Source: Magallana gigas (taxonomy: Eukaryota). Taken from it: a DNA stretch of 64,000 nucleotides. How positions within the stretch are numbered: the stretch's first letter is position 1; every line of letters starts with the position of its first letter. The stretch is taken from NCBI RefSeq assembly GCF_963853765.1, contig NC_088854.1, positions 12,214,001 through 12,278,000 on the forward strand, read 5' to 3'. Below are positions 23,351 to 45,638 of this stretch, in pieces. The notes below the pieces were generated by a model, which was not told the origin of the DNA, made no database searches, and saw nothing but the letters and a program-made list of their open reading frames with translations. Both the position numbers and the translations under genes were made by a program.

Positions 23351-24713
23351 GTTACAGTTATTGAACAATTATTTTGGGTATCACGAGATATTCTGATGGG
23401 TGGTGACGAGTTCGCGTCAGCGAACGAGTTCACACCCATCAGAATATCACGTGATACCCAAAATATAATTGTTCAATAAGGAACTTGTATCATGTCAATC
23501 ATTGGTCACTTGACCCATTGTTTTAGCTCCACCCAAATTAGCACGGACTGAATTCGCGCCTCTTTCATAATAGTTGCGCGATGCAGGACGAAATGGACGT
23601 TGGCGATTTTTCTGCGTTCGATGTTTTCCAGGCGGACATCGATGACCTTACTCTGTCTCAAGTCTGCGAAGAAATGGAAAAAGAAAACGCCGTTTTTGAA
23701 GGATTTGACAAATTGACTATGTCACAGACAATGCAGGCATACGGATTCAGCCATCATGCTGATCCGCTGGACCACATGGATTTTTGTTCCTATGAGCAAA
23801 CAGATTTCGGTTCAAGTATGGTCAATTTCGACGTGAATTTACCCGAGTTGAGTGATGCCGATGTTTTGGTGGAACCTGATATTAAACCGACTGCCAGCGT
23901 ATCTGCTACGGAAAATACCCGTTTTGTTGCACCATTATCAGAAACGGACGTTAAAAATTTGATAGATTCTCAGGAAAATGTCAACACTAAGAAAAACACG
24001 ACCTGGGCGCTCCGTGTGTTTGAGTCTTGGCGTGCACACAGAAACAGTTATGGCGAATCTGTGAAGGAATTGCATGACATGAACACCGAAGAAATGAATT
24101 ACTATCTTGGGCGTTTCATTGCTGAAGCCAGAAAACAGGATGGACAACCGTACCCTCCACGCTCACTATATCTCATTTCCTGTGGCCTTTTACGACACCT
24201 TAGAGACAAGAAAGTTTATGATAAAAACTTTCTCTGCACCAAAACATTGGAGTTTTCCGAATTCCGAAAAATACTCGACGCAAGGATGAAGGAGCTGCTA
24301 CAAATGGGATTCGGCACAAAGGTAAGATTTTGTTTTTTTGCAAAACTAAGTAAAATATTTGAATTTTTGATAATTTGGCTTCTTATCTAATACTGACAAA
24401 TATTTCGATTGAAGGTCAAGCAGGCGCAGGCAGTTCTACCTGAAGACGAAAAAGTGCTTTGGGAAAAGGGTGTCTTCGGAAATTCCACTGCTGAGGCATT
24501 GCAGAGTACGGTGTTCTTCTATGCGTGCAAGTTATTTGCTTTGAGGGGCCACGACGAGCATCACCAGTTAAAATGTGATCAGTTTGCAATTGGAGAAGAT
24601 CAAGGAGGGAAGTATGTTGAATTTTTCGGACGCAGCAATAAAACATACAAAGGTGGCCTCAAGGATCTGGAGATTTCCAACAAAAACATCCGTCATTATT
24701 GCCAGAATGGTAA

Positions 24714-24758
<45 letters not shown>

Positions 24759-25905
24759 CTCTTTCTCTCATCATTTTAGATGTATGATTTTTAAAGTGTA
24801 CGTTCATGCGCGGATCTAGGAGGAGGTGTGGGCGGACAACCCCCCCTTTCCCCCTGGTGGGAAAATTTTCTGGATCCACGTATGTGTACCTTTAATCTTA
24901 TGTAATGGACTTCTGGTTTGTTTCTTTCTAGTGGATCGAAATGTAGCAGATTTCTTTAAACAGTACATTGAAGCACTGGGGGGACGAGGTGCATTTTACA
25001 GACGACCTCTCCATGGCTATCCTATTCGTTATGGTGAACAACCAATAGGTATCAACAAGCTGAAAAACTTCATGAAGATCATTTGTGAGCGTGGTGGTCT
25101 GAAGGGCAATTATACAAATCACAGCGGAAAACGAAGTTGTGCGACACAACTTTACATGGCTGGTGTCGATGAACAGGAAATCATGGCAAGAACTGGGCAC
25201 AGGTCTGAAAAAAGCGTGCGCAAATACAAGCAGTCATCGACAGAGATCCAACAGAAAGTAGCATCTGTCCTAGATCCGCCTCCCACAACTTGCTCACTGA
25301 AGCGTGATCGAGCCTCTGATGATGGAGAAAACTGCATTGGTACATGCAAGTCCAAGAAAATGAAAGTTGAAGTATCTGATGAATTGCCGAAAACCAGTTA
25401 TTCGAGTGTATTAAAAGAATTATCCCAAAACCGTCCGATTTTTAGCAATTGCAACATTTCTTTCAACTGCTAAACCTTAGGAGCAGAGGTGCTGTGTGAA
25501 ATGTTTTTTGTTTGTTTGATATTGTGTAAACCGACCAATTTTCAGCGATCGCAGCCGAATCTTATGAGTTGAGCACTGTGTGAACTTTTTTTGTTGTTTT
25601 TTTTTTTGCATTTAATCTATGGCAATGGCCATTTATTTGCCGTTTTGTTTATATAAGCGACCAATAAAAATATTTTGGACACATGCTTGTTGAATGATTT
25701 CGTGCAAGTTTAAAAAGTAACTGTCAATTTGGAAATAATTTTAATAGCGTGGCTGTGGATTCATGTATATTTTGGAAGTTATTGTACATGCAATAACTTC
25801 CTAAAATTGCACGATAACGCATGCCTTAAGCTCCGCCTCTGTAAGGGTATTAAGAATTAATGAACAGAAGTTTTCAAAGGAAAAACACCGCACCCGTGAT
25901 ACAAT
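23351..25905 (+). mobile_element. Crypton-type tyrosine-recombinase transposon, copy 2 (subfamily B), between KIF4 and UBAC1
   Basis: Boundaries defined by identity with the inverted copy at 42330-44911 (GTTACAGTTA..CCGTGATACAAT). 5' hairpin 23358-23479 and 3' palindrome GGAAGTTATTG/CAATAACTTCC at 25774-25801. Confidence 0.9.
23581..25473 (+). CDS. Crypton tyrosine recombinase, 3 exons (23581-24321, 24415-24709, 24932-25473), 525 aa, intact
   Basis: The GT-AG introns join in frame (phase 0, phase 1; 1578 nt). Motifs NTKKNTTWALRVFESWR, YLGRFIAEARKQDGQPYPPRSLY, FALRGHDEH, NHSGKRSCAT, TGHRS and VRKYK. Confidence 0.9.
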
Positions 25906-43476: not shown

Positions 43477-43547
<71 letters not shown>

Positions 43548-45638
43548 CTTACCATTCTGGCAATAATGACGGATGTTTTTGTTGGAAATCTCCAGATCCT
43601 TGAGGCCACCTTTGTATGTTTTATTGCTGCGTCCGAAAAATTCAACATACTTCCCTCCTTGATCTTCTCCAATTGCAAACTGATCACATTTTAACTGGTG
43701 ATGCTCGTCGTGGCCCCTCAAAGCAAATAACTTGCACGCATAGAAGAACACCGTACTCTGCAATGCCTCAGCAGTGGAATTTCCGAAGACACCCTTTTCC
43801 CAAAGCACTTTTTCGTCTTCAGGTAGAACTGCCTGCGCCTGCTTGACCTTCAATCGAAATATTTGTCAGTATTAGATAAGAAGCCAAATTATCAAAAATT
43901 CAAATATTTTACTTAGTTTTGCAAAAAAACAAAATCTTACCTTTGTGCCGAATCCCATTTGTAGCAGCTCCTTCATCCTTGCGTCGAGTATTTTTCGGAA
44001 TTCGGAAAACTCCAATGTTTTGGTGCAGAGAAAGTTTTTATCATAAACTTTCTTGTCTCTAAGGTGTCGTAAAAGGCCACAGGAAATGAGATATAGTGAG
44101 CGTGGAGGGTACGGTTGTCCATCCTGTTTTCTGGCTTCAGCAATGAAACGCCCAAGATAGTAATTCATTTCTTCGGTGTTCATGTCATGCAATTCCTTCA
44201 CAGATTCGCCATAACTGTTTCTGTGTGCACGCCAAGACTCAAACACACGGAGCGCCCAGGTCGTGTTTTTCTTAGTGTTGACATTTTCCTGAGAATCTAT
44301 CAAATTTTTAACGTCCGTTTCTGATAATGGTGCAACAAAACGGGTATTTTCCGTAGCAGATACGCTGGCAGTCGGTTTAATATCAGGTTCCACCAAAACA
44401 TCGGCATCACTCAACTCGGGTAAATTCACGTCGAAATTGACCATACTTGAACCGAAATCTGTTTGCTCATAGGAACAAAAATCCATGTGGTCCAGCGGAT
44501 CAGCATGATGGCTGAATCCGTATGCCTGCATTGTCTGTGACATAGTCAATTTGTCAAATCCTTCAAAAACGGCGTTTTCTTTTTCCATTTCTTCGCAGAC
44601 TTGAGACAGAGTAAGGTCATCGATGTCCGCCTGGAAAACATCGAACGCAGAAAAATCGCCAACGTCCATTTCGTCCTGCATCGCGCAACTATTATGAAAG
44701 AGGCGCGAATTCAGTCCGTGCTAATTTGGGTGGAGCTAAAACAATGGGTCAAGTGACCAATGATTGACATGATACAAGTTCCTTATTGAACAATTATATT
44801 TTGGGTATCACGTGATATTCTGATGGGTGTGAACTCGTTCGCTGACGCGAACTCGTCACCACCCATCAGAATATCTCGTGATACCCAAAATAATTGTTCA
44901 ATAACTGTAACATATCTGAAAAAATATCACATCACTAGAGGGGACAGTGCTCTGGTCCCATAAAGGCAAAATCTAACAGAATGAACCGACACAACACTTC
45001 ACTATGGTTGATTGGTGTCAAATAATATTTTGAGAACAAATGAATATGAAATAGCAGTTTACTACATGTACATGTACATATGAAAGTCGATTGAAAGAAT
45101 ATTTGATTTGATACCAATTTAATCATAATCAATCGGGATGATGATTAATTGTTAAGGCAAGAAAGATTTCTCTGAATAATATCACATTACTTGTATTTCT
45201 TTGGAATATTAATCTAAAAAACTCACCGCATATTTCGTAATAAACTTTGAAGGTTAATATTATAGCAAATCATAATAAACATCCGAATTATATTCAGAAA
45301 GTATAATTTTAGGGGAAAACAAAATATAAAAAAAATAAAATAAATGAACGAAAAGTGATATGTATAATGAATTTGCGTGCGTTTTTTTTTAAGTTTGTTA
45401 TTAATCATAGATCTTGTGTAGGAAGTGATAGTCTTGTAGATATTACTTTACCCGAGGTAATATCGCTAATTAATGATGAAAATAAATTCTCCATGTTGTT
45501 TTTTTTACAGAAAAGACCCCCGGTCCGGCAGCGTACAGTCCTCGTCTAGATAATTCCAAACTGATGAGCCCAGCTTTCACCATCCGAAGTTTACGGCGGG
45601 AAAAGTCGCACGTGCTTGGGCCTTTCGCTACCTTCTGA
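36064..45638 (+). CDS. STPG3: Sperm-tail PG-rich repeat protein, STPG3-like; exons 36064-36629, 40700-40920, 41448-41536, 41675-41792, 42125-42250, 45511-45638
   Basis: All six exons join in frame at GT-AG sites. SHIPPO/PG repeats GPGPCTY, PSPGEY and TPGPAAY, each followed by P-A/S-F/W-S/T motifs. GGGRTSWEKSWFQS..WPTPSSY resembles vertebrate STPG3 as I remember it. Confidence 0.75.
39198..39699. mobile_element. MITE with AGGGGCA(T/A)(G/A)GTCACG TIRs, Kolobok-like (TTAA-like flanks)
   Basis: Left AAGGGGCAAAGTCACGTTTTTGGTCAAA and right TTTGACCAAAATCGTGACCATGCCCCTT. A shorter relative lies at ~60023-60236. Confidence 0.6.
42330..44911 (-). mobile_element. Crypton-type transposon, copy 3 (subfamily B), inverted near-identical copy of 23351-25905, in STPG3 intron 5
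   Basis: The reverse complement matches copy 2 end to end. The differences I could see are in (CT)n and homopolymer lengths (2582 vs 2555 bp). The listed ORF translations are identical. Confidence 0.92.
42762..44681 (-). CDS. Crypton tyrosine recombinase, 3 exons (44681-43941, 43847-43553, 43303-42762), 525 aa, intact
   Basis: Same exon lengths, splice sites and protein as copy 2. Confidence 0.9.

What the first reader, a model, noticed from the sequence alone, without database searches (positions are those of the whole stretch)
23351..44911. Two near-identical, intact, intron-containing Crypton copies in inverted orientation 16 kb apart
Seen: 23351-25905 (+) and 42330-44911 (-) share a complete 3-exon 525-aa YR ORF, both introns and both ends, and have unrelated flanks. 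The differences I found are microsatellite and homopolymer lengths. Retained introns indicate DNA-level rather than RNA-mediated movement. Inference: this is a very recent, possibly local, transposition by a family that may still be active. The pair could also act as an inversion substrate for the ~16 kb holding UBAC1 and STPG3 exons 1-5.
Basis: partly seen in the sequence, partly recalled or inferred. Interest (0 to 1): 0.75.

Follow-up and report, generated by a model that had tools for sequence, protein, structure and literature searches.

The report
Identical inverted Crypton transposon pair
Two letter-for-letter identical, intact copies of a "cut-and-rejoin" (tyrosine-recombinase, Crypton-type) jumping gene sit head-to-head 16 kb apart in what earlier notes of this scan call the Pacific oyster genome, most likely because the element hopped locally very recently; the kind is known, but the pair is a good place to test Crypton activity and Crypton-driven inversion in an animal.

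Summary
Copy A (23351-25905, +, 2555 bp) and copy B (42330-44911, -, 2582 bp) have no substitution in 2555 aligned bases. They differ by one 27-nt indel in an intronic (CT)n tract. Flanks are unrelated at all four junctions and occur once in the 564-Mb assembly.

Independent, diverged copies on other chromosomes start and stop at the same bases, so these are true element ends. Each copy carries one three-exon, 525-codon gene (QRICH1 domain, DUF3504, Phage_integrase) with GT-AG introns and the recombinase motifs conserved across 28 related loci. It fits CryptonA.

The only other full-length copy (another chromosome, about 3.5% diverged) is frameshifted, so A and B are the only intact copies. 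pN/pS against that copy is 0.21.

Best reading: a very recent local DNA-level transposition. Expression and insertion polymorphism are untested.

The inversion idea has a precedent in Chlamydomonas Cryptons. A 122-nt terminal hairpin extends across the joined ends. The scan already found other young Crypton families with such hairpins in this genome. Verdict: a new member of a known kind, of moderate interest.

The parts
23351..25905 (+). Copy A, full-length CryptonA-type element (2555 bp), ends GTTACAGTT...CGTGATACAAT
   Evidence: The ends are shared with copies on other chromosomes.
23358..23479 (+). Copy A left-subterminal imperfect palindrome (element positions 8-129). It folds as a long hairpin.
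   Evidence: Self-inverted match at 84%. DNA fold is -52.7 kcal/mol, z = -15.5. When the ends are joined, the stem gains about 10 bp across the junction (-63.6 against -56.7 kcal/mol).
23581..24321 (+). Copy A exon 1 (247 codons; acidic N-terminus plus QRICH1 domain)
   Evidence: Pfam PF25561, E = 1.8e-10. Open frame and AAG|GTAAGA donor.
24322..24414 (+). Copy A intron 1 (93 nt, GT-AG; holds an in-frame stop)
   Evidence: The related Crypton at window 8295-9095 has no intron here and reads colinearly across the junction.
24415..24709 (+). Copy A exon 2 (DUF3504 / first half of the recombinase domain; LRGHDEH and KTYKGGL motifs)
   Evidence: Pfam PF12012, E = 8.9e-13. Motifs conserved in 28 related loci.
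24710..24931 (+). Copy A intron 2 (222 nt, GT-AG). (CT)18 follows the donor from 24719 and is the only site where A and B differ.
24932..25473 (+). Copy A exon 3 with stop (second half of the recombinase domain; NHSGKR, GHRS and VRKY motifs)
   Evidence: Pfam PF00589, 32.3 bits against a cut-off of 27.1. Motif conservation.
25770..25805 (+). Copy A small palindrome in the 3' non-coding part
   Evidence: Self-inverted 36-nt match. It forms a stem in the fold, but the 160-nt region folds only modestly better than shuffles, z = -2.9.
25896..25905 (+). Copy A right terminus GTGATACAAT. It pairs with element positions 135-144 when the ends are joined.
   Evidence: The terminus CGTGATACAA is shared with a second Crypton family in this window.
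42330..44911 (-). Copy B, full-length element (2582 bp), reverse orientation
44783..44904 (-). Copy B left-subterminal hairpin
43941..44681 (-). Copy B exon 1
   Evidence: tblastn 100%
43553..43847 (-). Copy B exon 2
   Evidence: tblastn 100%
43304..43552 (-). Copy B intron 2 with (CT)32. The 27 extra nt are 43518-43544.
42762..43303 (-). Copy B exon 3 with stop
   Evidence: tblastn 100%
25906..42329 (.). 16,424-bp unique interval between the copies. It holds UBAC1 (minus strand) and at least one SHIPPO/STPG exon (plus strand), and is the segment that would invert.
   Evidence: Pfam UBL_UBAC1 6.3e-19, UBA 2.4e-8 and 3.3e-5, SHIPPO-rpt 2.2e-6

Best explanation
A and B are two genuine insertions of one autonomous CryptonA-type DNA transposon. 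The element is 2.55 kb long and carries a single three-exon tyrosine-recombinase gene. It has no TIR between its ends and no consistent target duplication. At its left end is a 122-nt subterminal hairpin, whose stem is completed by the right end when the two ends are joined.

The most likely history is that the element was copied at DNA level into a site about 16-19 kb away, in the opposite orientation, too recently for any substitution to have accumulated.

Inferred mechanism: the encoded recombinase joins the two ends into a circular (or folded) intermediate, and the joined-end site recombines with an A/T-rich target. Because both donor and new copy are present, the event raised the copy number. 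This could happen by transposition from a replicated to an unreplicated site or to the sister chromatid, or through an intermediate that leaves the donor in place.

Shown: identity, the element ends, gene intactness, the family assignment and the local clustering. Inferred: the timing, the intermediate, and present-day activity.
For: - Identity: 0 substitutions in 2555 aligned nt and one microsatellite indel. The Poisson 95% upper bound on divergence is about 0.12%.
- Flanks unrelated and single-copy.
- Homology of copies on other chromosomes (C10, C1, C6) ends at the same first and last bases, so the duplicated unit is exactly a mobile element.
- Domains QRICH1, DUF3504 and Phage_integrase, all above the Pfam cut-offs.
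- Motifs LRGxDEH, KTYKGGL, NHSGKR and GHRS..VRKY conserved in 28 related loci.
- GT-AG introns and a 525-codon open frame. Intron 1 is confirmed by an intron-less relative.
- The only other full-length copy is dead, with 84 substitutions, 14 indels and frameshifts. pN/pS of A against it is 0.21, which indicates selection on the recombinase along the active lineage.
- Other Crypton families in this genome have dispersed copies at 96-99.6% identity, so the superfamily is young here.
- Only about 8 left and 8 right ends of this family exist in 564 Mb, yet two full copies lie within 19 kb.
- Hairpin fold, and stem extension across the joined ends.
- Literature: Crypton-A is among the most frequent polymorphic insertions in an oyster population (bioRxiv 10.64898/2026.02.10.705023). 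Active Cryptons increase in copy number in Chlamydomonas (PMC9977147).
Against: - There is no read-level evidence. Presence or absence in other individuals, the cis phase of A and B, circles, and spliced RNA were all untestable.
- The microsatellite differs by 14 units. Under stepwise slippage that needs many mutations, or a large jump, or an assembly error, so parent and daughter may not be separated by only a few generations.
- Gene conversion between close inverted repeats predicts the same identity.
- No shared target motif or donor-flank carry-over links A to B, so the direction of the event and direct parentage are unknown.
Confidence: 0.68

Rival explanations
1. Two older insertions, themselves the product of an earlier local hop, have been kept identical by intrachromosomal gene conversion between inverted repeats 16 kb apart. 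The zero divergence would then not date the transposition.
For: Close inverted repeats of 2.5 kb are good conversion substrates (general knowledge). The 14-unit microsatellite difference suggests more elapsed time than 0 substitutions would. The first 150 nt of the dead C10 copy are 100% identical to A and B although the rest is about 3.5% diverged. This shows that identity in parts of this family need not mean youth.
Against: Identity runs without a single difference to the very last base at both ends. Conversion tracts rarely cover a whole 2.5-kb repeat edge to edge and usually leave differences near the borders. Other Crypton families show ordinary 0.4-4% divergence between copies.
Confidence: 0.17
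2. Assembly effect. Each insertion is real but heterozygous on a different haplotype and the primary assembly is a mosaic, or one copy is misplaced. The pair would then not exist in cis.
For: Only one haploid representation is available. No alternative haplotig for either site is in the assembly. Dinucleotide tracts, the only place where the copies differ, are error-prone in long-read assemblies (general knowledge).
Against: All four junctions have unique flanks, and a 2.5-kb repeat is shorter than typical long reads. The interval between the copies holds colinear host genes. The two copies differ in microsatellite length, so they were not collapsed or cloned from one read set.
Confidence: 0.08
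3. A transposase-independent inverted segmental duplication, for example by template switching, that happened to copy this stretch.
For: Many Crypton fragments in this genome do sit in tandem segmental duplications whose flanks are also homologous. Examples are L049/L050 at 99.8% and L062/L065 at 98.2% over whole 3.4-kb loci.
Against: Here the duplicated unit begins and ends exactly at the family termini defined by independent copies on C10, C1 and C6. Not one flanking base is shared.
Confidence: 0.02

Closest known systems
CryptonA elements of animals (Kojima & Jurka 2011, PMC3212892)
   Same: A single tyrosine-recombinase gene whose YR domain matches DUF3504. No C-terminal GCR1_C domain, no reverse transcriptase, no terminal inverted or long direct repeats between the ends, and no consistent target duplication. 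Found in molluscs. Size is about 2-3 kb.
   Different: That paper reports finding no terminal repeats in animal Cryptons, and my term search of it found no 'hairpin' or 'palindrom'. This family has a 122-nt subterminal palindrome at one end that pairs with the other end once the ends are joined. Other notes of this scan report the same in other oyster Crypton families. Whether this exact family is in Repbase could not be checked.
CryptonF-1_cRei of Chlamydomonas reinhardtii (Genome Res 2023, PMC9977147)
   Same: It is reported there as the first Crypton observed to be active. It increases in copy number despite clean excisions. Two copies in opposite orientation (233 kb apart) repeatedly inverted the interval between them. 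That is the behaviour proposed for the A/B pair.
   Different: It belongs to a different Crypton group (F, not A). It has a defined terminal motif CACCG that matches its CAYCG target. No such terminus-target match is visible for the three full-length copies here. No activity data exist for the oyster pair.
Domesticated DUF3504 genes (QRICH1, ZMYM2-4, KCTD1, KIAA1958)
   Same: Same domain pair (QRICH1 domain plus DUF3504) by Pfam. There is a weak alignment to the solved QRICH1 chain 9hjt.
   Different: Those host genes are single-copy and lack the full catalytic tetrad (PMC3212892). Here the Arg, His-x-x-x-Arg (HSGKR), His and Tyr positions are kept. QRICH1 has Lys where this protein has the first Arg. 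The gene also lies inside a mobile unit with defined ends and several copies.
Folded-DNA substrates of bacterial tyrosine recombinases (integron attC, CTX-phage attP); inversion by Flp/FRT on the 2-micron plasmid
   Same: Resemblance in working only. A YR element whose recombination site may be a folded hairpin, and a pair of inverted sites that could flip the DNA between them.
   Different: No homology was tested. Nothing here shows that the hairpin is extruded or single-stranded, or that the recombinase acts on it. This is recalled from general knowledge and is a lead only.

Membership tests
Crypton (tyrosine-recombinase DNA transposon), group CryptonA | Encodes a tyrosine recombinase whose catalytic domain matches DUF3504/Phage_integrase and keeps the R-H-R-Y residues | tested here: met
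   PF12012 at 49 bits (cut-off 29.7) and PF00589 at 32.3 bits (cut-off 27.1). LRG (Arg I), KTYKGG (Lys), NHSGKR (His/Arg II), GHRS (His III) and VRKY (Tyr) are conserved in 28 related loci. The assignment of Arg II within HSGKR is by motif only, not by structure. The spliced protein was not folded, because the joined sequence has no reference.
Crypton (tyrosine-recombinase DNA transposon), group CryptonA | No reverse transcriptase, RNase H or methyltransferase (separates it from DIRS, Ngaro and PAT) | tested here: met
   The element is 2555 bp. The only coding capacity is the 525-codon YR gene. The other ORFs are short overlaps of it. Both introns are retained in both copies.
Crypton (tyrosine-recombinase DNA transposon), group CryptonA | No terminal inverted repeats or long terminal direct repeats between the two ends | tested here: met
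   The self-comparison finds only the left-end palindrome (8-129) and a 36-nt internal palindrome (2420-2455). The ends share only an 8-10-nt complementarity (right end with positions 135-144).
Crypton (tyrosine-recombinase DNA transposon), group CryptonA | No regular target-site duplication | tested here: met
   Three full-length copies. A is flanked by TTAAA on both sides, but B and the C10 copy show no flanking repeat. With only three copies this is weak.
Crypton (tyrosine-recombinase DNA transposon), group CryptonA | No C-terminal GCR1_C DNA-binding domain (separates A/I from F) | tested here: met
   No GCR1_C hit in exon 3 at E <= 0.1.
Crypton (tyrosine-recombinase DNA transposon), group CryptonA | Mobility: several copies with the same ends in unrelated flanks | tested here: met
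   Eight left ends and five right ends were examined. Homology stops at element position 1 and at position 2554/2555, and the flanks are unrelated.
Crypton (tyrosine-recombinase DNA transposon), group CryptonA | Phylogenetic placement of the YR inside the CryptonA clade | not tested
   No reference CryptonA sequences were fetched. The assignment rests on domain architecture and host.
Currently active transposon | Insertion polymorphism, excision circles or empty sites, spliced transcripts | not testable with these tools
The exon-1 ORF is not in the protein collection.

The most novel reading that the evidence does not exclude
The pair is a live recombinase-driven invertible segment in an animal genome. 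The Crypton recombinase, acting on the two inverted hairpin-bearing ends, would flip the 16-kb UBAC1/STPG interval, as Cryptons do in Chlamydomonas. The duplicate would have arisen by a donor-preserving route in which the joined-end hairpin is the folded recombination site. That would be the first mechanistic handle on how animal Cryptons move and multiply.
Probability: 0.1. Interest if true: 0.7.

Novelty: new member of a known kind. Interest (0 to 1): 0.4.

Why it matters
Crypton transposition has been seen directly only in a green alga, and no animal Crypton has a defined mechanism. This locus offers several things together:
- the only two intact copies of a small family;
- exact ends;
- a candidate recombination site, the hairpin that closes over the joined ends;
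- a natural inverted pair around two host genes.

Simple PCR or long-read tests could show insertion polymorphism, circles and inversion in a farmed species with abundant sequence data. If nothing of that is found, this is simply one more young transposon insertion.

Tried and rejected
- The listing of cluster members with the 269-aa exon-1 ORF: the sequence is not in the collection.
- PDB sequence search with exons 2 and 3: only chance-level hits, except a weak QRICH1 alignment.
- The spliced 525-aa protein was never submitted to any search or fold, because the joined sequence has no reference. All protein work was done exon by exon.
- Paralogous empty sites: the flanks of A and B are single-copy, so none exist.
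- Target-site logic: I compared the rebuilt empty sites of A, B and the C10 copy with the joined-end sequence, in register and shifted. There was no convincing similarity.
- Tn916-like carry-over of donor flank bases: not seen.
- A Goodwin-type match between terminus and target: not seen.
- TATAT target, as reported by another note for another family: three of eight left flanks end in ATAT, the others in TAAA, ATAA or CTA. This is A/T-rich but not specific.
- The note that 60516-60888 is a non-autonomous partner: it shares no detectable sequence with this family.
- Abundant non-autonomous derivatives of this family: none found.
- The big protein searches were not used, because the family scans left nothing open.
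Full report
**Observation**

An inverted-repeat search of 20-48 kb finds two blocks, 23351-24717 with 43545-44911 (1367 nt) and 24718-25905 with 42330-43517 (1188 nt). Both are 100% complementary. Together they cover every base of copy A (2555 nt).

Copy B (2582 nt) differs only by 27 extra bases at 43518-43544. These lie inside the dinucleotide tract that follows the donor of intron 2. A reads GATTT(CT)18 and B reads GATT(CT)32. With 0 substitutions in 2555 aligned positions, the Poisson 95% upper bound on divergence is about 0.12%.

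Homology ends abruptly at both ends and the four flanks are unrelated. Each 400-nt flank occurs once in the 564-Mb, 29-contig assembly. The window is contig 2, 12,214,001-12,278,000. Earlier notes of this scan call the genome Pacific oyster. I did not test that myself.

**The duplicated unit is a mobile element, not an arbitrary segment**

A search of the whole assembly with copy A finds one more full-length copy on contig 10 (1,010,396-1,012,808). It also finds fragments on contigs 1, 6, 8 and 10 at 70-93% identity. I re-aligned these with 300 nt of A's flanks. In all eight loci that hold a left end, homology stops at element position -1 to 1 (GTTACAGTT...). In the loci that keep the terminus, it stops at position 2554/2555 on the right (...CGTGATACAAT). 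The flanks are unrelated.

The family is small, with about eight left ends and eight right ends in the genome. I found no abundant non-autonomous derivative.

**Gene and family**

Searched exon by exon, exon 1 (23581-24321) matches the QRICH1 domain (E = 1.8e-10). Exon 2 (24415-24709) matches DUF3504 (E = 8.9e-13). Exon 3 (24932-25473) matches Phage_integrase (32.3 bits against a cut-off of 27.1).

Both introns are canonical: AAG|GTAAGA...TTGAAG|G (93 nt) and ATG|GTAAGA...TTTCTAG|T (222 nt). The three exons are open and add up to 525 codons plus the stop.

A second, divergent Crypton lies in the same window at about 7731-10292. Its protein is 51-57% identical. It lacks intron 1 and reads [10 protein letters not shown] where this element splices GFGTK|VKQAQ. 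That confirms the junction by homology.

A protein search of the assembly with exon 3 returns at least 150 loci. In an alignment of 28 of them these motifs are conserved: L-R-G-x-D-E-H, K-T-Y-K-G-G-L, N-H-S-G-K-R, and G-H-R-S...V-R-K-Y. These are the Arg, Lys, His/Arg, His and Tyr positions expected of an active tyrosine recombinase. Domesticated QRICH1 has Lys at the first Arg.

There is no second gene, no reverse transcriptase and no GCR1_C domain. There is no TIR between the ends and no consistent target duplication. This is the CryptonA architecture of Kojima & Jurka (PMC3212892). I did not submit the spliced protein to any search or fold, because the joined sequence has no reference.

**Only A and B are intact**

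The contig-10 copy differs from A by 84 substitutions (about 3.5%) and 14 indels. These include +2 and -17 nt in exon 1, -14 nt in exon 3, and a 67-nt deletion that destroys intron 1.

Over 511 comparable codons, pS is 0.082, pN is 0.017 and pN/pS is 0.21. Much of that divergence therefore accumulated under selection for a working recombinase, that is, along transposing lineages.

Its first 150 nt, the hairpin end, are 100% identical to A and B. At 3.5% divergence, zero changes there has a probability of about 0.005. This points to constraint on that end.

**Anatomy of the ends**

Element positions 8-129 form an imperfect palindrome. As single-stranded DNA it folds at -52.7 kcal/mol, against -12.1 ± 2.6 for shuffles (z = -15.5). 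The other strand folds about equally well.

I joined the last 40 nt to the first 180 nt in a script, using the window file. The right terminus GTGATACAA then pairs with positions 135-144 (TTGTATCAT). The last T is bulged and the stem lengthens by about 10 bp. The energy is -63.6 kcal/mol, against -56.7 and -57.8 for the two integrated contexts. The breakpoint therefore lies inside one arm of a long palindrome that is complete only when the ends are joined.

The second Crypton family in the window has the same termini, GTTATAG...CGTGATACAA, and the same CTTGTATCA after its hairpin. Other notes of this scan describe such hairpins in other oyster Crypton families. Here I confirm it for this family only. 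Kojima & Jurka report no terminal repeats in animal Cryptons, and the terms 'hairpin' and 'palindrom' do not occur in that paper.

**How the pair arose**

Two of the three full-length copies lie within 19 kb of each other in 564 Mb. By chance that is about 38 kb / 564 Mb, or 7e-5. A local event is therefore required under any timing.

The retained introns, hairpin and non-coding ends mean the copying was at DNA level. The exact coincidence with the family termini excludes a template-switch or segmental duplication. By contrast, several other Crypton loci in this genome sit in segmental duplications whose flanks are also homologous (L049/L050, L062/L065).

Dispersed copies of other Crypton families are 96-99.6% identical. 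The A/B pair is the youngest pair among those I sampled.

I favour a very recent local transposition that left the donor in place (0.68).

- **Gene conversion of an older pair (0.17).** It predicts the same identity. Edge-to-edge identity with no residual difference argues against it. It gains some support from the 14-unit microsatellite difference, which implies either time, a large slippage step or an assembly error.
- **Haplotype-mosaic assembly (0.08).** It cannot be excluded without reads.

The direction of the hop (A to B or B to A) is unknown. No donor-flank bases were carried over and no target motif is shared.

**Consequences**

Between the copies lie UBAC1 on the minus strand and at least one SHIPPO/STPG exon on the plus strand. 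The UBAC1 hits are the UBL_UBAC1 exon at 32308-32664 and UBA exons at 30756-30986 and 29073-29255. The SHIPPO exon is at 40725-40952.

Copy B starts about 68 nt after what looks like a splice donor of an open frame at 42082-42312.

The hairpin ends face outward and the right ends face inward. Recombination between the copies, homologous or recombinase-driven, would invert the 16.4-kb interval.

[quoted passage not shown] Cryptons there also increased in copy number despite clean excisions (PMC9977147).

A 2026 preprint lists Crypton-A among the most frequent polymorphic insertions in Crassostrea ariakensis (10.64898/2026.02.10.705023). Active Crypton-A in oysters is therefore not a new idea.

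**What could not be done**

The exon-1 ORF is not in the protein collection. As a result, insertion polymorphism, cis phase, circles, inversion and splicing or expression remain untested.

**Verdict**

This is a new member of a known kind, of moderate interest as a concrete test locus.

Noticed in passing
window 7731-10292 (+): A second, divergent Crypton (51-57% protein identity to A/B). It has the same terminal words (GTTATAG...CGTGATACAA) and its own left-end hairpin. It lacks intron 1 but has an intron at the intron-2 position. A 97.4% identical copy lies on contig 9 (L043).
   Followed up: partly
window 42222-42313 and 44937-45028: Copy B sits between two direct copies (78% identical, 92 nt) of a stretch found nowhere else in the genome. 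The first copy holds the end of an open frame plus a GTAAGG donor. The second looks like a decayed duplicate of that exon end.
   Followed up: partly
L003:1501-1650 (contig 10, 1,010,396-1,010,545): The dead contig-10 copy is 100% identical to A/B over its first 150 nt (the hairpin end), although the rest of it is about 3.5% diverged with many indels. The cause could be constraint on the active lineage or conversion. This is unresolved.
   Followed up: partly
window 23346-23350 and 25906-25910: Copy A alone is flanked by the same five bases (TTAAA) on both sides. Copy B and the contig-10 copy have no such repeat, so this is probably chance in A/T-rich DNA.
   Followed up: yes
window 27074-28388: A tandem repeat of period 439 nt, 3 copies, 95% matches. 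It lies between copy A and the UBAC1 exons and has an inner 146-nt periodicity.
   Followed up: no
G000 contig 8 35.04-35.13 Mb; contig 10 25.44-25.69 Mb; contig 1 69.06-69.08 Mb and 26.10-26.16 Mb: Crypton recombinase fragments recur at regular spacings of 10-140 kb. Where checked, their flanks are also 98-99.8% identical, so these are segmental duplications carrying Crypton remnants, unlike the A/B pair.
   Followed up: partly
window 60516-60888: The element that another note calls a non-autonomous Crypton partner has its hairpin at the opposite (3') end. It shares no detectable sequence with the A/B family.
   Followed up: partly
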